A stretch of 64,000 nucleotides of DNA from Oikopleura dioica. Taxonomy: Eukaryota; Animalia; Chordata. The stretch spans positions 11,966,001 through 12,030,000 of the forward strand of contig OU015569.1 of NCBI GenBank assembly GCA_907165135.1, given 5' to 3'. Under the pieces are notes generated by a model. That model searched no databases, was not told the origin of the DNA, and worked only from the letters and a program-made list of their open reading frames with translations. Every line of letters begins with the position of its first letter. The stretch's first letter is position 1. Below are positions 21,203 through 47,900 of this stretch, piece after piece. The position numbers were made by a program, and so were the translations under genes.

Positions 21203-22459
21203 TCACTGTCGAGGGGCAGAGGCTGACTTGAGCGACCCGACTTGCTTCTCCAGCATATCTTCAATTTCTTTCTCCAATATCCGCTCTTTGAGATTCTCAA
21301 TCTCGATCTTCAACCTTTCGTTTTCATTTAAAAGTTCTGCCAACCAATTGTTCTTTTCCACCAACTCTTTCTTGAGGCTTGCTTGTTCCGCCATGTTGAG
21401 CGATCTAGGTCGGGGCTGCAAATCTGAGCGAGAGGAAGTTCCCCAAGTTGGAATCAAAGTGATTGAATAGGCTTGCGGAAGAAGATACCATCTTTTTGTT
21501 CTCATGTTCTGGAATTGCTCGGACGGTTGGAAATTTCCCTTGCACTCTTTTCGGGGCGAGATACTACACCGCGCTACTAGCCAACATATGGGGGCGCAAC
21601 GGAGCGCGCGCTGATATCAAAAGCATCTGAAAGAGCAAGGAAAACCGACGGCACTGAAAATGTAACGAATGTAACGAATGTAACGAAAACAACAAAAACA
21701 TGTCTTTTTCTCGTTACATTTTCAGTAAAATTCTAGAGATTTTTTGTTTTTCTTATTTCACCCCCTTGAGTTTCCTACCATTTCACCCGCGGAGCGGGCG
21801 TTTTCACTGGATTTATCTCTAAGAGACAAACTAAATCAGATAATTAACCTTTTTCTATACTACTGTGCACTTTTTTTTTATTTATATGCTCTTTTAGGGG
21901 TGTTCTAATGTCATTTGAAATGATACTCCAGAATATCGCTTTTTGGAAAAAGTTTCTAGAATCAGCTGATTAACAACAACATGTCTCTGTCTTCGTTACA
22001 TTTTCAGTAAATTCGTTGTATTCGTTACATCCGTTACATTCGTTACATTTTCAGTGGCGACCAGGAAAACTTCTCGTAGTTTTAAATAAATTAATCAAGC
22101 ACATGATTAAACTAATAATTATATACTAGCTCGCCTCCAAATGAGTGCAAGGGAAATGTCCAATCTCCCGAATTGCTCGTTGACCAAAGGAAAAAACTCG
22201 TTGTTGTCTCCGTAATAAACGAAGTCGTCGTAGCATTTGTGGCAGTCTCTCATCATTTCGGAAGAGGCGTAGAATGCCTGGTCGACAGGAATTCTGATTT
22301 GAGAGCCGGAATGAGAGAAGAGAGTGTTTTGGAGAATGAATTCAGAATTATCGATTCGGTCGAGCACCATTTGGTGGAAGTCAATGGCTCCGTTGGGATA
22401 AAGATAGGCGCCGGTGACGGTCAACGGACGGGAGAAGGAGAGGTTCGGGTGAAGAAGGA
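21203..22459 (-). CDS. Second copy of the terminal (His/Asn) exon of the kinase-peptidase gene, split by nested transposons and extended by a coiled-coil tail; alternative exon or pseudo-exon
   Basis: LLHPNLSFSRPLTVTG..HQMVLDRIDNSEFILQNT..VNEQF | NMRTKRWYLLPQAYSITL parallels 22714-23108 and has the same phase-1 AG acceptor. Confidence 0.6.
21521..22169. mobile_element. MULE-like non-autonomous element with 9-bp TSD, containing a nested element
   Basis: About 49-bp imperfect TIRs ggacggttggaaatttcccttgcactc.. / ..gagtgcaagggaaatgtccaatctccc; TSD GAATTGCTC at 21512-21520 and 22170-22178. Confidence 0.85.
21646..22062. mobile_element. Nested MITE with 8-bp TSD (hAT- or Merlin-like)
   Basis: TIR core cactgaaaatgtaacgaatgtaacg / cgttacattcgttacattttcagtg; TSD AGGAAAAC at 21638-21645 and 22063-22070. 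Confidence 0.8.
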
Positions 22460-27527: not shown

Positions 27528-30500
27528 ATGCGCACGAGAATCAAGGAAGAGATTTGCCCAGTAGAAGGAGACAGTGTCGAAAATGAGGCTTCGAATGAAT
27601 GTGTGGAAAACGAATCGCCACGAAAGGGCCAAAAAACGAACCAACTAGCGAATGTGAAGTGCCTCGAATGTCACTGTGTCGGAACAGTGATGAAAACAGT
27701 CGATGGAATCGTCCTTTCTCCGAATAAAGTGAAAAAGACTTTGATCGATCTCGGTGGAGGATTTTTCATGCCGAACTTAAAAAAAATGATGCCGGTGGAG
27801 AAGGTGAAACTTGCAAATCAAAAGGCGAAAGAATTCATGGAGGGTTTTAATGTAGCCGTGGAAAAGAGTGAAGACAATGGACCCTCCAAGGGATTTTTCA
27901 AAAAGATCAGAGAGAGGTTCACTAGAGGCATACGAATGGCAGAACGTGAGAAGAAAGTAAGGCTTGCCGATATGCTGGAGCGAGAAAAGAAAAAAACTCC
28001 GGCGAGAGATGCTCCCGATCAGTTCAGGGGAATCTTCTCTGACGAGTTCGAAGAGAACCATTTTTGGCGATCGAAAAAACGTTTTTCTCTTCAGTAAGTA
28101 TGCTTGAAACTTTGTCCGCAACTGTCTACGTTTTTATTTCTTTTTCAGCGGAAACGCAACTTCGAGTCAATTTGCTGTTTACATGTTGTTCGGATGCGTT
28201 TTCTGGGGCACCATTGTCGGCATAAGTATTCAAAGCTATAAAAACTCAGTTGAAGAAACTTTCAGCGAACTATTATTCGATGCTTGCTGCTCGTATTCAA
28301 CCAAGTTATTTGACAGAGGTTTGCCAAGTCGGCTTCAAAAATTGCACTGTTACGAATGATATGGACTACTGTGCGCATCTACTTCATGACTGTATTGGAA
28401 CGGGAAATTTTACTCAACCAGCTGCGATAAAATTACCGGAAGTAAAAAAAGAGTCAACACTCATTTTCACCAAGAAAGAAAACGAAATCAATCAAATGCG
28501 ATGTAAGAAACGAAAATTCTATGCCATGTTTTTTATAAATAATCAAAATCAGAATTCTTGATTTCCTAAAAAACGCATCAAAGACCGGTATATCTGCCGC
28601 CATCTTTGTTCTCAAACTCTCGTCTTGGAATCAACAATCAATAATGCTTTTCCACCTTGTGATCGAATTTGCTTTGAACTGACTAGATCACATGACTTTG
28701 CCGGAGAAGTTTGCCCGCTTGAAAAATATTGCAAAAAAGGATGTCCTTGTCCTTTTTATCAGTGTGAAAAAATTGAGAATGTGCAAACGCTTGTTCCTGT
28801 CTTTGATTTAAAGAAAGAAGAAATTATTGAAGGAAGGTTGAGATTCTTTGCTAAATCTATATTTTCTTGGGTACCGCTTCGTCAACCCTTCGAGTCCCAA
28901 AAGCTGATGATCTTTCCCTCAAATTAATCACGAAGAGAATCGAGAGTCACTACGTCAACTTGAAAAGATTCAATATGTCCGAAACTATACCTGAGTATAA
29001 AAATATCCGATCCGCTTTACCGATCTTCGAGCACAAAACGGATCAAGTTCTATTAATTTGATGAATGCAACTCTAGCGGAGAAACTTTTTCCTCATGAAT
29101 GTTTTCGATTGATTAAATTAACAAAATAATAACAAAAAATTAGTAAAACAACGAAAGTCAATCGGTGCTACTTTTCTCAATGGGGAACATTATCTGGTCG
29201 ATGCTATTGGAAATCTGATGATAGTGAAGGAAAGTGGCGATTCTTCAATTTTTATTCCAAATAGACACAAAAAAATGTAAGCTCATATTCTTTCGTACTT
29301 TCCTTTGCTCGAGTCTGAATAAGAAATTCTTCTTGAATAGTGGCTTCTTCGTCTTCCATTTTGGTTCTTCGATTGGAACGCATCAAATTGAAATTCGCAC
29401 AAAAGAAAAGGACACAAAAGTTTTTCCAGTTGTCGTCATCTGAAAATGGTCAGAAAGATAACCTTCTTTCAAACACCTTTTACACTCTCTTACAGACTGA
29501 AACTGACAGTTCTTAAAAAAATTTATGACCAGTCAAAGCCGCCCAACTGGAAGAGATGAAAAATGCTACTACTACGCCCCTGACTACAATTTGAACCGTT
29601 TTGAAGAAGCCCAAGGCTACATCGCCAGCAACCACTTCAACGCAAAAGTGTCTTCAACCAGCTTCAAGGGAGTATTCTATTTAATGAGCGTGAGGCTAGG
29701 AGATCATTATATCAAGCTATCGACGACTCGGGCCTTGAACAGGATCAGGAAGGAGGAAGAATTGGAAAAAGGATGGAGAAAAAGCGACTTTAGGGTGCCC
29801 ATAGAAATCAGAGACCTGGATCTGGTGCATGTCGTTCCACTGGAATGTGTTGAAGTTTATTATTGATCATATTATACGTTACATATTTAAAGACTTCATT
29901 TTAACTCAAGAAAGATCCATTTAGGGAGGCTTTTGCTGATACTCGTGTCAAGAAAAATAGAACTCTCAAATACACTCTACTCAGTGTTACTTGAGGTCGA
30001 GGGAAAATTTCTGACTCTGGGTCGCGAGTGGATCGGTTCTCTTGTAAAATACGATAAACATCATGTCTGTTATTCCAACATGTTTGCTCAAGACGATCCC
30101 AATTACACAGATCTTGAAGGTTACAACAAGGATGAATGTGAATATTTTGGTCAAGGAATCGTCAGCGACGAAAGGATCCTTATTCAAAACTTTGTTTTCG
30201 ATTCTTTCTTCGAAATCAAATTCAATTTCGGAAAGGATTTATTAAATCATTAAATTCAAGAAAAGATCTAATTAACTTGAATCAGTCACAATCCGCTAAA
30301 AAGAAATAGTCGATCTCGAATTTGTTCAACTCGAAGCGTCAAAGAAGATGCACGTGACAAGTAATCCCTTTTTCGCTTTTCACGACGATGTTTTTCCTGC
30401 TTTTGCGAAGAATGCCGCCGCCCAGATAAAATTTCCTTACAGCAAGACGAGCAAGTTACTCAAAACAATCATTCCACGCAATTACTTTTCCTCGCTTAAA

Positions 30501-32406
30501 GAATTAAATCATATTTCGACTCTCGCAATGGATTTCAACGAAATTGACAAATTCAAATTCGAAATCGATTTCCGAACGAAATCACGCATCTTGAAAGATA
30601 CTAAAATTCTCGAATTTGTTTTTTATGATGAAACAAGCCTCTTGAGCTTCGGAAATTTTAAAAATGGCTCTCTTTGGATTGATTCTGATTACTTCGATGG
30701 ACGATCTATTTTACGCTTGAATTGTGACAAGCTAACACACTTAGGGTTTGATTTTTACTCATTCCCATCAAACGAAACGTATTTTCTACAAGTTTCCGAG
30801 GAACAGTTAAACATGGAATTTTTTCCGGTTGATTGAGCCACTCAGAGCGGGAGGAGGCAAGAATTGACGGAATAAAAACTACAATTTGACCAAAATTTTC
30901 ATCAAATTTTAGACATCCCAGATGTCCCCCTTCTCTCGGTAGCCAATCAAATTTCAGGAAATATTGTCGAGGAAAATTAAATAATTGATTGCAATATTTT
31001 ATCAATTTGAGCCGACCCCGAAAATCACATACATATAATACTATACCGGTGATAGCAGGCCTTTACCCTGGATAAAAATACTGCCTGGCGACAACCTGGC
31101 GACAACCTGGCGCCACCCCCTGGCGACAATCTTTCGCCACTAGCCAATCACAATTTACGAGACTTGTAGTGGCGGCGTAACACCGGATTTGAGTCTGCTA
31201 TCATCGGCATGTATGAACCCATACAGGGATGATAGAGTCGCTAAATCCACAAAGTCATTTCCATGAAATTTAACTGATACAAGAACTTCAAAAAGAACAA
31301 GAAAAGACTTTCAAAAATACGCATGATCGGCCTTGAAAATATCAAAAGTAAAACTATCAGGATTATCAAAATTGACCGCTGGACTAGACTGAAAAGCTTT
31401 ATTTACACTTTTGAGAAAAAACTCTTAATCATGGGCAAAAACCTAGAGTATGCATTTTCGATTTCCTATGATGGATCAACAAAAACGGCAGAAACAATCT
31501 CGGCACCGAGGAAGGGGCGCGGAGAATTGAATGAATATCTTAAAGCGTCCCCTCATGCTCTTCTAAAAAACGAGCTCTTTATTTTCGGTGGATACTGGAA
31601 TGAAAGAAAAGTAAGTAGCAAGTTTGTTATTTGACGAAAATACGTTATTAAGATCGCCAAATTGGTCGGCTGCGAATGGAAAGAAGAACGGACACGATTA
31701 ATTAACGAATTTGGGGTCCTTTCTGCTGCACTCTCGATTAAGGACGGAGAAAAAGTACTGATTTGCTTTGCTCTGTCTGATTACAAAACATGCGAAGTCT
31801 ACGATGGAGAATCTTCAGTTGAAACTTTTCCGTCTAAGTTTCGACATTGGGCTGGTAAACTCGCCCACTATAAAGGAAACCCGACTACTGTTGGAAGTTT
31901 CTCCTTCTCGGGCGAGCAGAACAAGGTTGAGACTCTTTCTTCATCTGGTTGGGTTACTTTAACCGATTTCCCTACCGAAAGGTATTTGAAAAGCAAAAAA
32001 TTTTTTTTTTGAGAATTATTTTTAGTTTTGTGGCGTATCATTTTTTGATAGGCCTTCCAAGTGGAAGTCTTTTGCTCGCCGGAGGAGTCTATAAATACAC
32101 CCGTTGCTATTCACCAATTTGGATTCTACAAGACGACGTTTGGAAGAAAATTGGCAATCTTCAATACGTAATTTTTAAGGACATACAAATCTAAATATGA
32201 ATCTTGTTTCAATTAAGGCTGATGGATATGGATCGACAATTATGATCAGAAACTCAATTTTCATCGTCTCTGGCCGCGAAAGTCCTCACGCAATTGAACG
32301 CCTCGATTTCGAAGGAGATCAATTGGTCAACCAACAAGTCATAGAATACGGTGTTTACAGTTTGAACCCTGTTCTTTTCGAAGTTCCAGCTGATTACTGC
32401 ATTTAA
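27528..32406 (+). CDS. Lineage-specific type-II membrane protein: CxxCxC, TM, Cys-rich CPxxxxCxxGCPCPxYxC module, C-terminal Kelch-like repeats (could be two genes)
   Basis: KCLECHC; FAVYMLFGCVFWGTIV; VCPLEKYCKKGCPCPFYQCEK; Kelch-like LFIFGGY, LLLAGG, IFIVSG. Collinear paralogue at 39586-44437. Confidence 0.6.
31044..31212. mobile_element. Small MITE in a probable intron
   Basis: accggtgatagcag.. / ..ctgctatcatcggc arms with internal cctggcgacaa repeats. Confidence 0.55.
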
Positions 32407-39585: not shown

Positions 39586-42500
39586 CTATAGGCTGCAGGA
39601 ATTATCATGGGCGAGGAAAACGACTGGAGCGGCGCCTTCTCCTTCTACTTGAGCGATAATATCAGTCCAGACGGGATTTTCTTCGGAGTCTCATTTCTGG
39701 TTCCAAATTTGTAAAAAATATAAAACCATTACAATTACTATAACAGTAATGAAACTAGAAAATTGATCTGATAAAAAAGAGTCCATATAAAACTACTCTT
39801 ATTAATTAAAAACGAAGAAACCATTTTCTAAATTGATTTGGTGGACGAAGCCCAAAGAGTCTGGAATGTCGCTGTAACTTTGTTCAAAATTGCTGGGAAA
39901 CAGAAAAATATTGTTCTCCACCAAAATCGCCGATGAAGCAAACATAGGCTTAAAAGCCACTTTTAAAAATGCCGAGCAAAAGAACTTGCCTCAGAGAGAA
40001 AACCAGCGATCGACCATTCGTCGTTCAAAAGTTGGTAGATTCTGTCCAAATTGGCGGCCCAATGGTCGTTCCCGCCGATCGTCAAGAGCTTTCCTGAAGG
40101 GAAGCCGATTGTAGAAAATCGAATAATATTTCCTCTAAAATTCGCGATTATAAAGAAAAAATAAAACTTCTGCTCTCACCGCGGATGAACGGGAAGTGAA
40201 TTTGTCCACCCGTTTTCAGAAAGAATCTCGACAGCTCCGTTAGACCGCAATCCCGCGATAGCGATTGCTTTACCATTGTATAGAGCCAGTCCTCCGTCCG
40301 CGTGAACGACCTTGGTTGCGTTCAGAGGCTTCGTTTCCAATCCGTCGAATAATTCGCAGCGTTTCTTTGTTTCTCTGTCGAAACAGACCAAAACTTCAAT
40401 AAAAATAATATGATGATAGTATAATCATTAAACCGAACTTACCTTTGCTTCCTTGTTCAACAGAAACACTCGCGTGTGCGAATTCATAATCTCCCAAAAG
40501 TCGCACCGACAATTCCTTGAAGCTGCATCCCTCCATCCGTGAAATCTATCGAAATAGCATTAGCAGCTTTTTATTGCTTTTATTTTACTTTGTGGGCATC
40601 ACTGTTGCCTCCGAAAACGTGAACTTGGCCGTTGAGCAAAGCGAATGTCGAGAAAGTAACATAACTAGAAACGTCGCCGGAAAACCCGATCGGCGGGGAG
40701 AAGGAAACTTGTTTGTCGATCGAGCCATCGTGTTTCAAAGCAAAAGGTCTCCTGGCATGAAAATTGGTGTCAAGGGCGTTAATTTGTTTCGAATTTTCCT
40801 CGATTGAATAAATAAAGTTCTTGACTTCCGCGCCACTGTGTAAAATAACCCGCACTCTTTCATCGTTTTTTTCTTCTAGCTGGGCTCGGCAGTCTGAGTC
40901 AGCCTCTGAAAAAGCTAAAATGAAAAGCCGGTTTTTTTTTCAAAACGGAGTCGCGAAGGATGCCGATTAAAAAAAAGCATACTTGCGAAGCTACATTGCG
41001 GCTCCGTTTTGAAAAAAGCCGCCACGCGTCTTTTCATTTTGCCTTTTTCAGAGGCTGACTCAGGTAGCCGAGCCCAGTCGTCTAGAGCGGTCATCTCAAT
41101 TTTAGAAGAATTGCTGGGATTCATTCCCTTCAAGTCGTCGCACCACTTTCGACACCGTCTTTTTTCACGACACCATTTTTTGCGACATTTGTTCCATGCT
41201 TTATCCATTTCTGCTTTGTAGTCATTGATTTTTCTTTGTGGATTCTTTCATGGTTTTAAGCATCGATACAAAAATGACAAATGCATTGTTAAAAAACTGT
41301 TCCTCTAGAATTTCTACGAGAATTGCCTCGGGCGCGAGTGTTGAATTCAACTTGAGCTCAACATCGGCTAATTGAGAAATATTTAAATTGAGAACGAACT
41401 GCTCTGAAAAATAGTCAGAATCGAGCCAAATCGACCCATTTTCAAATTTTCCAAAGCTCAGGAAAATAGTTTCATCGAAAAATTGACACTCAAGAATCTT
41501 CATTTCCGATTTTTCTTCCTCAAGTGTGTTCAAAACATTGATTTGAAATTTCAAACTCGTTGTTCGATTGAAATCAAGTTCGAAAGAAGAAATGTGCAAA
41601 AAGTCTTCCGGCAAAGTGAAGAAATTGTCCGGAATGATGGTCTTTTTCACTGGTCCGAATAGAGTGATGGCTGGCTTGGGGAATCGCGATTGGGAAACTG
41701 CGTTTTTAGAGAAAGCTGGAAAAACATCGTCGTGGAAAGCAAAGAAGGGATTGCTTGTGACAGGCATTTTTTCCGTCGCGTTTTGTTGGATGAAATCGAC
41801 TTCTATTCGCTCGAAATCGAGTTTGACTTCAAAAGCAGCGTCGAAAACGTAATTTTGAACGAAAAATCTTTCATTTTGAATTGCTCCGCTGCAAAAGTAC
41901 TCGCATTCGTCGTTGTTGCGTCCGAGAATGTCTGTATAGTTCAGATCATTCTCAGAATAGAGTTTCGAATAGCAGCGTGATTCTTGCTTGTATTTAACGA
42001 GAGATCCGATCCACTCGCTGCCCAGAATCAAAAACTTTCCTTCCGCTTCGAGCAAGAAGGAATATCGCGTGTTCGAAAGACTTATGCTTTGTGCTGGGCT
42101 CGGCAAATAAGCAGAAAACCTGAGTCAAGGTCTTGAAACGGCTTCGCGGCTTTTTATTAGGGCATTTTTGAGAAACTTACTCAGGTTTTTACACAGGTTG
42201 CCGAGCCGAGCCTTCGAGTGACTAAAATGACCATCAGCCGACCCAAGTCAATCTTTGAGGAGTTAAAAAGGGGAGGTGTCTAGAATAGGGTCGGACACAA
42301 AAAAATTTTGACTCTAGAACCGACAAAAAAATTTCAACAAATTTTGCGTGGAAATTTTCAATCAGCAGCCGCCCACACATAATTTGTGGAATTTTTTTTG
42401 TCGGTTCCAGACAAAAAATCACAGTTCTACAACTTTCGACCCCTTTCAAAGGAACAATATGAACAGGATCAAAATTCAATCCCGCTCTCATTTCCGCCGG

Positions 42501-44437
42501 CAGCGCCATCTCGTTCTTTCTCCACCCTTTTTCCAGTTCTTCGTCCTTTCTGATCCTGTTTAAAGCCACTGTGGAGGAGATCTTGATCCATTCCTCGCCC
42601 ATTCTGATGCTCATCAAATAAAACACTCCTTTGAAGCTGACGGAAGATGTTTTGGCGTTGAAATGGTTGCTGGCAATGAAACCTTGCGCCTCCTCGAAGC
42701 GATTCAAATTGTATTCTGGCGCATAGTAGTAGCACTTTTCTGATCTTTCAGTTGGAGCGCTTTGAAGGATCAGAACATTCTTGGTTTTTTTTTTGAAAAC
42801 TATGTTTTGTTTTGACCTTTTTCAAACAACGACAACAGGGAAAATCTTTTTGTCTTCGTCTTTTCGCCGGATTTCGATGTAATGAGTTCCAATCGACGAC
42901 CCAAAATGAAAAACAAAGAACCTCCTTTAAGAACCAATAAAGTTAGGGTTTGGCTAAGGCAAGGACCACGGCAATGGTTAGGGTTAGGGTTAACCCGCGT
43001 GCGCAGATTGGCCCTCTTTTTGGACAGCGCCTTTTGAAAGAGATCTTGAAGGAGACTTACATTTGATATGATCGATTTGGAATAAAAACTGGGGATTTGG
43101 CTGTCTCTTGAATTTCGACAAGATTGCCAATTGCATCAACAAGATAGTGTTTTCCATTGAGAAAAGTTGCACCAGTTGACTTTTGCGTTTTTTATCTTTT
43201 TTTTTTAAAGGAAAATAAGCCGAATATAAAGTGAATGTTTGATTGTTAAGAAAATAGATATTGAAAAAACTTGCGTAAGGAAAGAGAGTCTCCGTCAAGT
43301 TTATCATTTTTTCTTTCCCGCTTTCGCTCAAATCCGAAAAAACCATTGGAAACTTTTTGATTTGAGAGGGACGGCTTGGCCAGCGACCAGTGATTACTTC
43401 CATTCCAAAATACTCGTCTTTTTTGCTCAATTCATCGACTTTAATCGTCTCCGATTTCTGAATGTCAAAAGCAGGCACCATTTTCTGCGGCGAGTGCATT
43501 TTTTCGCACTCGTAAAACGGACACGGACATCCACCTTTGCAATATTTCTGAAAAGGGCAAACCTCTCCGGCCGAATCGAACGCCCTTGTCAGCTCGAAGC
43601 AAATCGACTCACACGGCGAAATTGGGTTAGTCCTCGTTGATTTCAAAACCAGCGTTTTGGAACAAAGATGGCGGCAGATTTTTTGGTCGTAGAACTTTTT
43701 CTTTTTGCAGCGGACGAGATTCACTTCGTTCTCTTCGTTTGAAAATTCTAGTTTTGCAGTTTCGCTTCTGTCAATTGCTGAAATAGGCCCAGGAAGAATG
43801 AATTCTTGGGTTTCGTAGCATTGTTTCATTAGATGGCCGCAGTAGTCTATTTTAGGCTCGTCAACCTGTGTTAAAACCTACGCCAGGGTCCGGAATGAGC
43901 TCTAGTAAAAGGCTGGACCCTGACTCAGGTTTTAATACATGTTCTCGAGCCCAGCGCCCATCGTCTCCATTCGAACGCACTTTTTATAGTTTCGATGACA
44001 AACCGAAGTCAGAAAAGTCTTTACGCCTCGGGATTTCTCCAACGACTGAAAGTTCACTAAAAAGATACTTTCCATCAAACTAAAAAATGATTAAAAATTA
44101 CGGATAAGAATGACTGTCGTCCAAAAAACGCCGAAAACTGCTAGATAAGTGTACTTTTGCGGATCCGTGGCGAATCCATGCTTGCTTAGCTGCAGTTCGG
44201 CAGTTATTTTCTCTTTCCAAGTTTTCGTCTTTTTCAAATCGCGCTGTCGCGTTCGGACGTTTCGAGTTGTCAGAATTTCTTCGGAGAAAAGATACGTTTT
44301 TCCGTCTTTTTGGCGAAGAACTCCGATACAGTCGCAATCCAAACACTTATTTAAAATCAAAAACAAAAGTTATTAATGATAAAGACCTGAATTCTCGGCT
44401 GCTTAGACAAATCATCGTTTTCCTCTTCAATTACCAT
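39586..44437 (-). CDS. Inverted paralogue of the Cys-rich/Kelch type-II membrane protein
   Basis: KCLDCDC; YLAVFGVFWTTV; VCPFQKYCKGGCPCPFYECEK; NRFEEAQGFIASNHFNAK and TSNPFFAFHDDVFPAF shared with the + copy; Kelch-like VHVFGG and AIAG. Confidence 0.6.
40880..41077. mobile_element. CTGGGCTC-family MITE forming nearly all of a predicted intron
   Basis: TIR ctgggctcggcagtctgagtcagcctctgaaaaag / ctttttcagaggctgactcaggtagccgagcccag. Confidence 0.85.
42094..42210. mobile_element. CTGGGCTC-family MITE forming nearly all of a GC-AG intron
   Basis: ctgggctcggc..aaaacctgagtca..ctcaggtttttacacaggttgccgagccgag. Confidence 0.85.
43853..43954. mobile_element. CTGGGCTC-family MITE forming nearly all of a GC-AG intron
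   Basis: taggctcgtcaacctgtgttaaaacct..ccctgactcaggttttaatacatgttctcgagcccag. Confidence 0.85.
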
Positions 44438-44939
44438 TTGACTCCGTTTTTCTCAGAAAAAAATATTCAGGAAGTAAATGTAACCGATCGCCGGTATCAG
44501 TGATGGGTGTTCTGAGGAAATCATAACTCCAGCTGACCTGAAGACAGACGTCCGTCGCAGTATACTGTCTGTCTTGTCCTAGAAATAGTAAAATCGCGCT
44601 TTTGAAGTGTCATTAACCTGCTTTCTGAGACCTGGTCTGTCATTTGAAAGTTCAAAATATCAACTTGCTTTTTTCGTCATTCTCTTTGATACTAACACTA
44701 CTGCATTTTTGTCATCAAAAGTCAAAATTGCCTTTGAAAGTTCTCTGCTAAGTCGGATTGGAAGAACTTGCACATGCTGTTAGTGCTTCCTTTTCGGATT
44801 TCGATTGTCCACTAATAAAAAAAATAATTTCTTTGCAAACAAAAAAAAGACGCAAGAATTTTATCATATTTTGTTTATTGAAAGAAAGAAAGAGTGAATA
44901 ATGGTATAAGAGAAAAAAAACCCCTTCGCCGTGTTTTTC

Positions 44940-47900
44940 TTAGTTTTCGTCAGTGCATTCTGAAGACATACAGCTGCATTCCTTGGCGACTGTAAGCTCG
45001 TATGTGAATGATGAGCCGTCTGGGCAAATCATATCGACGAGCTTTGTATCGGTCTCGGTGCAAGTGCAGCAAGAGCATTGCTTATGGTATTTGTTCATGG
45101 CTTCTGACCAGATGGAAGTTGAAGTACATTCACCAGAGCAAAGAGTCATCTCGACGACCTCCTTGGAGATGCATCCATCAGCTTCGACGTAGTCGGTGTA
45201 ATCAACCTTGACGCCGCATCCAGAAGTTGTTTCTCGCTCGCAAGTGACGCAGCAGCCATCTTCTGAGGTCTTGATGAACTCAGGTGGACATGTCTCGTCG
45301 AACTCTGGGCACTGAACGGAAGAGCACTCGGTGTAGACCTGACCAGTCAGCTGATCTCGGACGCAGCAGCAAGTTGAGCACTGGTCGTTTGATGGAGACC
45401 ATGTCTGGCCAACAGTGTACATCTTGTTGTTGTATTTACAGCTCTCCTGGACGCACTCGCCGCAGCACTGTCCTTCAACTGGCATCATGATGTAGCCTTC
45501 GGAGCAAGTCGAGCACTTTGTCTCGTGACAAACAGCGCTGTATGTTCCCTCGGAAACTTCCATGCATGTGCAAGTTGTGCAAAGATCCTTGCTCCAAGTT
45601 TCACCGCATTCGTATGTCTTGTCGCCGATGCAGCAGATTGGCTCAGCAATGCATGTTCGCTGGATGCAACCGCAGACATTTGTAGAGTCGCTAGCAATTG
45701 TTCCCTTAGGGCACTCATCTGGAATGATGCACTCATCGCAGACGCACTGGACAGTGGAGCAGCAAGGGTTGAGCTCAATGTTCTTGAGAGACTTTCCAGC
45801 TTCGCAGGTCATCATCTTGTTGGCCATAGGGCACTTGCTGTAATCGCAAACACACTCGGCTGATGAGCAGCATTCGTTCTCAGCAGCTGGATGGTTGACG
45901 ATCATCTCGTATGACTCGCAAGCAAGATCGATCTTGGCACACTTAGTCTCGTCACAGACACACTCGTAAGTGTTAACCGCTGGACAGCATGCGTTGATAA
46001 TGAAGCTTGAGACCAATCGAAGCTTCTGGTCGCTTGAACAAGTTGGAGTGACTGACTCCTGGCACTTGCTCTCATCGCAAACACACTTGTATGTAGCGCA
46101 GCAACCAGTCTTGGTTGTTTCGAGCTTGAATCCTTCATTACAAACTGGAGCAGATGGACATCGAGATTCGTCGCAGTCGCAAACGTACTTTGTGCAGCAG
46201 TCGCCGTCTGGAATTATCTTCAATACTTCGTGCTCGTCGCAGCATGGAACTGTGGTTGAGCAAGTTGTAAGGTCGCAGATGCAAGCATATTCTGGGCAGC
46301 AGACGTCACTGTTGAGAGCGACGAGCTTCTCTTGTGGGCCACACTTCACTGTGATTGCTGGGCATGTTGATGGATCACAGACACAGATCTTTGATTCGCA
46401 ACATCCGTTAACCTTGATCTCTTCACGCTCGCCGAGTCCGCAGACTGGATCGTTCACAGCTGGGCAGAGTTTCTCGTCACATTCGCAGTTATATTCTGGA
46501 CAGCCAGATTTGTCTTCGCCAGTAACAACAAGTGCTTCTCCGCAATCGCAAACTGGTGCCTTGTCGCATTCCTTCTCCTCGCAGTAGCACTCATAGTACT
46601 CGCAGCAAGTATCCTCAGATACGAGTGTCTTCGTGCAACCAGCTGGGCAGGTGATTGGAGCTGGGCATTGGTTGATAAGAGATGAAGCAATGTGTCCAAT
46701 AGCAACGCATGTATGCTGGATACATGGATTGGTGCAGTCGGTCCAGATCTCACCAATATGTCGGCCGATGTCGTCCTCATCGACGCATGCTTTACACTTA
46801 TCACATGTAACACAAGCGCCATCCTTGAGGATGAGACCTTCTGGACAATAGCAACCTTCAGAGTTGTAGTTGATCTTCAATGACTCGTATGTGAGGTAGT
46901 TCTCACATGTTCGAATGACATCAGGACCACAAGTTCGGTATTCCATGCCGGCTGGGCAATGTCCTGGGCAGAACTCAGCAGATCGCCACTCGAAACACTC
47001 TGTTGTCTGCTGACATTCTCGAATGTAAGCGGCGTAACTCTCGCAAGTGTAGTCAACAGTAGTGTTGACAACTCGATCTTCCACAGTTGTGGTGATATGA
47101 CCGGTCTCGCAATTGACTGTGTTACAGACTGTCTGATAGATCTCAGAGTTGACGTGTGAGCAAATATCGAAGACTTCGCTGAAGGTTGTGTCGCATGACT
47201 GAGTATCCTCGCACTCTTCGATGTCATCGCATTCTTCGTTCCTTGAAACTGTCCAATAGTCAACGGCAGATTCGACTGTTGAGAACTGAGCAGTTGCGAA
47301 ATCATTCTCGCTGATTCCGTCGCACTGACCGCAGATACCTTCCATTCGGCCAGCATATGATGCAGAAACAGTGACAGACCAAGCACCAGTACAAGGTGTG
47401 TAAGCAAGCTGAGCATCGCCAATGCACGCTCGGATCTCATTGAAAGATCGAGTGATTGTGAATCCATCAGCATTAACTTCACTGCCTGTCGCCACAGCAA
47501 CAGTGTTACTCTGGAGGCCAAGAATGTGTTGGATAGCTTCAGACCTTGAAATCTTCAATACTCCACTGTCGACAGAGAAGATCTTGATGTAGTCAACTTG
47601 TGAGTTCTCGTTCTTGTAGACAGAAATGGAGAATCGACCATCGTTAGACTGAGCAACAGTCACTTCAGTGCAAGTGATCGTAGATGTGAAAGATGTTGAG
47701 TCGAATGAAGTAAAACCAACTCCAGCGAAACCAGAGCAAGTACAACCGCAAACGTAAGTGACACAGCATTCACCCTGAACCTCGATTGGCTCGTGACCGT
47801 TAGCGCAAGTTGGCTTGACAACGGCACAGGTAACATCTTCGCAGGAGACGTGTCCTGTTTCAAGGCATGTGCATGTAGTGCAAGCGCTCTTTGAAACGAT

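What the first reader, a model, noticed from the sequence alone, without database searches (positions are those of the whole stretch)
43847..43957. 111-bp GC-AG intron that is essentially one MITE and is absent from the paralogue
Minus strand ..GAG ACG ATG G|GCGCTGGGCTCG..GAGCCTAAAATAG|AC TAC TGC gives KKCVRMETMDYCGHL, which aligns without gaps to the intron-less paralogue KNCTVTNDMDYCAHL at ~28337-28381. Without the MITE only about 10-14 nt remain, too short for a pre-existing intron, so the intron most likely arose with the insertion.
Basis: seen in the sequence. Interest (0 to 1): 0.85.

Follow-up and report, generated by a model that had tools for sequence, protein, structure and literature searches.

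The report
Transposon insertion turned into an intron
A small jumping element landed inside a coding exon of a sea-tunicate gene and very probably became a new intron after two single-letter changes in the duplicated landing site created its splice signals, and a sister gene hit at the same spot by a different element shows the same two changes.

Summary
The sequence observation is confirmed; splicing itself is not shown. Genome: Oikopleura dioica Okinawa. The 111-nt insert is a 103-nt hAT-type MITE plus exactly one 8-bp target-site duplication (TSD), not a 10-14-nt remnant. 47 of 49 close paralogues are uninterrupted at this codon, so it is a gain. Read-through hits a stop. The gene still looks selected: a 794-codon model without stops, and three wild alleles that keep the GC and AG ends while the interior differs 11-13% (exons 2-4%). 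Neither splice dinucleotide was in the target (GATGGACT); A>G in the left TSD copy made the GC donor and G>A in the right copy made the AG acceptor. An unrelated element at the same codon of another paralogue carries the same two substitutions, and a third paralogue keeps a ready-made GA-AG option. None of the four RNA runs laid came from this lineage, so the junction is inferred; an equal-length GT-AG rival exists. Transposon-derived introns are known in Oikopleura, and this scan has noted many similar MITE introns elsewhere in this genome. The new part is splice sites acquired after insertion, in parallel.

The parts
43847..43957 (-). Predicted GC-AG intron, 111 nt = MITE + one 8-bp TSD
   Evidence: only one of 28 frame-keeping splice options restores the family residues
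43852..43954 (.). 103-nt non-autonomous TIR element (MITE); ~40-nt arms starting CTGGGCTCG; terminal CAG decayed to TAA (TGA in wild alleles)
43955..43962 (-). Upstream TSD copy GATGG|GCG; A>G relative to the target creates the GC donor (allele L081 reads GATGG|GCT, one change only)
43844..43851 (-). Downstream TSD copy AATAG|ACT; G>A relative to the target creates the AG acceptor
43932..43934 (-). In-frame TAA inside the MITE; read-through truncates in all four alleles
43958..44056 (-). Upstream exon (..SLEKSRG..KKCVRMETM)
43275..43846 (-). Downstream exon, Cys-rich family domain (DYCGHL..CPCPFYEC)
41222..44351 (-). Host gene B (5' end not defined): member of a roughly 100-150-copy Oikopleura family with no Pfam match; 7 G-initial..AG introns join to 794 codons without a stop
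42087..42211 (-). Second MITE intron in the same gene, 125 nt = 117-nt MITE (42094-42210) + 8; donor AAG|GC made of the last TSD base and first MITE base, acceptor from the TSD
43866..43976 (-). Rival equal-length GT-AG intron (would give KKC-VDEPKI-DY)
28337..28381 (+). Uninterrupted homologous codons of paralogue A

Best explanation
A hAT-type MITE inserted into the 8-bp target GATGGACT of a coding exon and duplicated it (shown by the TSD and the paralogue consensus). The insert is removed by the spliceosome as a 111-nt GC-AG intron whose two ends lie in register in the two TSD copies, so the mRNA is exactly the pre-insertion sequence (inferred). The ends were made after insertion by A>G in the upstream copy and G>A in the downstream copy (shown by comparison; order unknown). 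The gene probably survived the interval through a ready-made GA donor at the start of the TSD and the MITE's terminal CAG, the state still seen in paralogue L036, or through a GT-AG splice 19 nt upstream. The terminal CAG was later lost, which would amount to a 5-nt slide of the intron through its TSD (inferred, weakest step). The -55 kcal hairpin may hold the weak ends together (speculative).
For: Insert = 103 + 8 with family TSD of 8. 47/49 paralogues uninterrupted, ATG-GAY nearly invariant; 17/17 database relatives that span the site have the same spacing. Read-through stops in all four alleles. All four TSD substitutions in the window allele lie in the predicted intronic halves, none in the exonic halves. 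Three wild alleles keep GC and ATAG while the interior differs 10.8-12.6% vs 2-4% in flanking exons (Fisher p 7e-5 to 8e-4); synonymous codon changes equal or exceed replacements (9/8, 12/8, 14/10). 2,049 exon nt without a stop (P about 0.01 at 5% and <0.001 at 10% neutral change), 72/73 conserved columns kept; full model open for 794 codons. Paralogue L040, hit by an unrelated TIR element one base away, has the same G|GC and ATAG|AC substitutions, also in a wild allele. ATG-GG at this site occurs in 3 of 67 pattern matches: B, L040 and L040's neighbour. The genome has 11% non-GT/AG introns (PMC8008620).
Against: No spliced read: none of the four runs laid came from this lineage, and no annotated protein for gene B was returned. 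The donor TGG|GCGCTG is weak next to this gene's other non-canonical donors (GCAAGT, GAAAGT) and lacks the upstream AG reported for Oikopleura GA donors (PMC7072748). 27 other frame-keeping splices exist. The three alleles are not independent (L080 and L082 have identical introns). An in-register G..AG pair arises by neutral change in 4.5-10% of such insertions, so one case alone is not remarkable.
Confidence: 0.76

Rival explanations
1. The insert is spliced, but at the canonical GT-AG pair 43976/43866 (same 111-nt length), which swaps six codons for MITE-derived ones (KKC-VDEPKI-DY).
For: Canonical dinucleotides, a T-rich CAG acceptor inside the MITE arm, present in all four alleles; L040 has a similar GT-AG option.
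Against: It replaces the nearly invariant Met by Ile. The would-be exonic MITE end carries two replacement differences among alleles (D/A, K/E), while the would-be intronic VQMETM still matches the family. The in-register GC and AG in two paralogues would be coincidence.
Confidence: 0.1
2. The insertion is not spliced; gene B is a young pseudogene or makes a truncated product, and GC/AG are chance substitutions.
For: No expression seen (uninformative runs); large redundant family; weak donor; 4.5-10% chance of an in-register pair.
Against: No stop or frameshift in 794 codons, exons about 4-fold more conserved than the insert among alleles that all carry it, excess of synonymous changes.
Confidence: 0.07
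3. A short GC-AG intron pre-existed at this codon in a common ancestor of B and L040, and different elements later entered or replaced its interior.
For: B and L040 share the identical junction flanks; the tree is poorly resolved around both.
Against: Each insert equals element + exactly 8 nt, in registers offset by one base, leaving no room for an older intron or a second TSD; a single origin for the three interrupted copies appears in 0% of bootstrap trees; 47 paralogues lack any intron.
Confidence: 0.04

Closest known systems
Introner elements that recruit splice sites from the TSD (Micromonas, Aureococcus, Florenciella, Symbiodinium; PMC9860276, PMC12130899)
   Same: Non-autonomous TIR element with TSD; splice sites partly or wholly in the TSD; exact restoration of the mRNA; GC/GA donors tolerated.
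   Different: Introners are defined as spliced upon insertion with consistent sites across copies. Here the present sites needed two later substitutions, and copies of this MITE use different registers (GA/terminal CAG in L036, G+C/TSD AG in the second intron).
Transposon-insertion intron gain in Oikopleura dioica (Denoeud et al. 2010, as tabulated in PMC3443670; original not readable here)
   Same: Same species complex and same general route.
   Different: Whether this MITE family or post-insertion splice-site creation was described there could not be checked.
MITE-derived non-canonical introns of Fritillaria borealis (Henriet et al. 2019, via PMC11282704 and PMC13326754)
   Same: Larvacean introns with TIRs and TSDs at lineage-specific positions, removed by a tolerant U2 spliceosome.
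   Different: Fritillaria introns are mostly AG-AC/AG-AT and form most of its introns; this one keeps G..AG ends.
Parallel intron gain at homologous sites in Daphnia pulex (PMC4202315)
   Same: Independent, unrelated inserts at the same or adjacent site.
   Different: There among alleles and not traced to named transposons; here among paralogues, each with TIR and 8-bp TSD.

Membership tests
MITE (non-autonomous class II TIR element) | Short, non-coding, terminal inverted repeats | tested here: met
   103 nt, ~40-nt arms, z -8.5
MITE (non-autonomous class II TIR element) | High copy number, dispersed | tested here: met
   1,032 terminal-motif matches vs 0 control
hAT superfamily | 8-bp TSD | tested here: met
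   7 of 31 perfect
hAT superfamily | Autonomous partner with a hAT transposase sharing these TIRs | tested here: inconclusive
   9 PF05699 matches in the genome, but their ends could not be fetched; MULE-type elements with 8-9-bp TSD not formally excluded
Introner element | Intron absent from homologues (gain) and made of a repeated element | tested here: met
Introner element | Present splice sites available at insertion | tested here: not met
   Reconstructed target GATGGACT lacks GC/AG in this register; a different, GA/CAG register was available
Introner element | Splice sites consistent across family copies; many genic copies | tested here: inconclusive
   Three exonic copies examined use three registers; no genome-wide count possible
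Spliceosomal GC-AG intron | Removal seen in RNA | tested here: inconclusive
   No reads of this lineage in the four runs laid
Spliceosomal GC-AG intron | Ends conserved, interior free, flanks under coding constraint | tested here: met

The most novel reading that the evidence does not exclude
In O. dioica any 8-bp-TSD transposon in an exon can mature into a precise intron by point changes in its TSD copies. One codon of one gene family shows three independent outcomes side by side: the ready-made GA-AG state (L036), a state slid 5 nt to GC-AG (this gene) and the same GC-AG reached by an unrelated element (L040). This would make the TSD a template for repeatable splice-site creation and for intron sliding by more than one base.
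Probability: 0.4. Interest if true: 0.7.

Novelty: new variant of a known kind. Interest (0 to 1): 0.5.

Why it matters
How an exonic transposon becomes a precise intron when it does not arrive with matching splice sites is poorly documented; reviews say it is not understood why such elements are spliced (PMC3443670), and that evidence for intron sliding beyond one base was lacking (PMC3488318). Here the pre-insertion sequence is known from dozens of paralogues, the exact substitutions can be named, and three independent insertions share one codon. That makes the steps directly testable by RT-PCR and minigenes in a laboratory chordate.

Tried and rejected
RNA: four runs laid on 40750-46600 at 90% likeness. 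Reads on the neighbouring mucin-like control gene were mostly 90-95% alike with fixed differences, so they come from another O. dioica lineage; no read covered the junction, which says nothing about splicing. An alignment-based search for full-length annotated models returned only two distant OKI2018_I69 proteins. Pfam, no match; ESM Atlas, best 0.85, lead only. TSD lengths other than 8 rejected. Read-through rejected. Selection on the hairpin not detected: 30-32 of 40 Watson-Crick pairs in all alleles. Denoeud 2010 and Huff 2016 were not held.

Full report
Origin. The window's genome is 64,281,565 bases in 19 contigs, matching the Okinawan Oikopleura dioica assembly OKI2018_I69 (64.3 Mb, 19 scaffolds, 11% non-GT/AG introns; PMC8008620). 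Two distant family members carry OKI2018_I69 names on contigs of the same lengths.

Observation. On the minus strand, 43957-43847 is 111 nt, starts GC and ends AG; removing it gives KKCVRMETMDYCGHL, colinear with the + strand paralogue at 28337-28381. Read-through stops at TAA 43934-43932. The insert folds as one hairpin (-55 kcal/mol, z -8.5) and belongs to a dispersed family with 1,032 terminal-motif matches.

Anatomy. Among 31 copies with flanks, an 8-bp direct repeat is the only length above chance (0.569 vs 0.278 shuffled), as in hAT elements (established knowledge); hAT dimerisation domains exist in the genome but were not linked to this MITE. The element spans 43954-43852 (103 nt), so 111 = 103 + 8. 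The host gene belongs to a family of roughly 100-150 copies with no Pfam match. Of 49 close paralogues read, 47 are uninterrupted here and 45 of these have ATG at the Met codon and 45 GAY at the next; 17 database relatives show the same spacing. The target was therefore GATGGACT. The upstream copy is now GATGG|GCG and the downstream copy AATAG|ACT: all four changes lie in the halves that the intron would remove, and two of them (A>G, G>A) are the splice dinucleotides. Allele L081 reads GATGG|GCT, so A>G is the only fixed change in that copy.

Is it spliced? Not shown. Indirect evidence is good. Seven introns with G-initial donors and AG acceptors join into 794 codons with no stop (boundaries chosen by eye against paralogues). 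Gene B keeps 72 of 73 conserved columns and has the family's pN/pS of about 0.27. Three wild alleles from marine metagenomes all carry the insert with GC and ATAG unchanged; its interior differs by 10.8-12.6% from the window against 2-4% in the flanking exons (p 7e-5 to 8e-4, alleles not independent), and synonymous changes equal or exceed replacements. So the gene has been under coding constraint while carrying an in-frame stop, which needs removal at the RNA level.

Which junction? With GT, GC, GA or GG donors, 28 splices keep the frame; only 43957/43847 restores the family residues. A canonical GT-AG pair of equal length (43976/43866) is the main rival; it would lose the conserved Met and make two MITE-derived codons polymorphic for replacements. 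The proposed donor is weak compared with the gene's older GCAAGT and GAAAGT donors, which is the main point against it.

Parallel cases at the same codon. L036 (G000:C1, near 14.568 Mb) has a different subfamily with the same termini at the identical target, plus a nested element; it can be removed exactly with a GA donor at the TSD start and the MITE's terminal CAG, at the cost of one synonymous change. L040 (G000:C5, near 0.208 Mb) has an unrelated 203-nt element with termini CAGTGTTT and TSD copies CGATGG|GC and CGATAG|AC, offset by one base: the same two substitutions, giving a 211-nt GC-AG intron, also present in a wild allele. The three copies never form one clade (0% of bootstrap trees; L036 pairs with an uninterrupted copy, 98/80), though the backbone is weak. 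Genome-wide, ATG-GG at this site occurs in 3 of 67 pattern matches (B, L040, a neighbour 1.9 kb from L040) and ATA-GAY in three copies, one of them uninterrupted by its coordinates. Neutral change gives some in-register G..AG pair in 4.5-10% of such insertions, so two of two is unlikely without selection, but only survivors are seen.

Mechanism. Shown: insertion, TSD, the substitutions, conservation of ends. Inferred: spliceosomal removal at GC-AG; an early stage using GA/CAG, as in L036, or the GT-AG pair; later loss of the terminal CAG, which would be out of frame with the new donor. About 25% of 8-bp targets in this exon would give this MITE an exact intron at once if any G-initial donor works, and well-kept TSDs favour T at 3, A at 6 and a purine at 7, which often supplies an AG (small sample). 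The gene's second MITE intron (42211-42087, 117 + 8) fits that ready-made type.

Comparison. It works like an introner with both sites recruited from the TSD (PMC9860276; PMC11282704), and transposon-derived intron gain is already listed for Oikopleura (PMC3443670). It fails the introner criterion that the present sites exist at insertion (PMC12130899). Parallel gains are known in Daphnia (PMC4202315). This scan's unchecked notes list many MITE/TSD introns elsewhere in this genome, so the class is common here; I found no paper describing parallel post-insertion creation of both sites in TSD copies, in five limited searches.

Verdict. Real, very probably a functional transposon-derived intron gain; a new variant of a known kind. 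Interest 0.5.

Noticed in passing
window 42087-42211 (-): Second MITE + 8 insert in the same gene; GC donor from last TSD base plus first MITE base, AG from the TSD; ends unchanged in two wild alleles.
   Followed up: yes
L049, about 1,080 nt downstream of the studied codon (family position near window 42608): 202-nt insert with TIRs starting CAGAGTTCC and a perfect TSD GTTAGGAT; removable exactly as a GA-AG intron with both sites in the unmutated TSD.
   Followed up: partly
G000:C4:6081280-6081340 and G000:C1:3981476-3981534: Coordinates imply further inserts of about 60 and 42 nt at or near the same codon in two more paralogues; letters could not be fetched.
   Followed up: no
G000:C5:205962-206059: Family fragment 1.9 kb upstream of L040 that also has ATG-GG at the site and no listed downstream exon; possibly a tandem partial copy with the same element.
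   Followed up: no
window 43274-43180 and 42437-42253 (-): Family-wide introns with GC/GA donors (GCAAGT, GAAAGT) and A-rich 3' ends ending AAAG rather than a pyrimidine tract.
   Followed up: partly
window 42270-42420: A 135-nt inverted-repeat insert in intron 42437-42253 is absent from wild alleles L080 and L082: a presence/absence polymorphism.
   Followed up: partly
window about 28500-28580 (+): Paralogue A has a private 60-nt insert with an in-frame stop in the Cys-rich exon, flanked by a duplicated KKR motif; splice sites not resolved.
   Followed up: no
window 40880-41077: 198-nt member of the same MITE group with a 7/8 TSD in the neighbouring gene; splice potential not tested.
   Followed up: no
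window 41222-44351 (-) and 27550-30830 (+): Host family of roughly 100-150 copies with a Cys-rich domain after an N-terminal hydrophobic segment, no Pfam match, and apparently largely missing from long annotated proteins.
   Followed up: partly
L039, family position near window 43427: 352-nt insert of another TIR family (also at window about 21519-22171) in or just after the Cys-rich exon.
   Followed up: no
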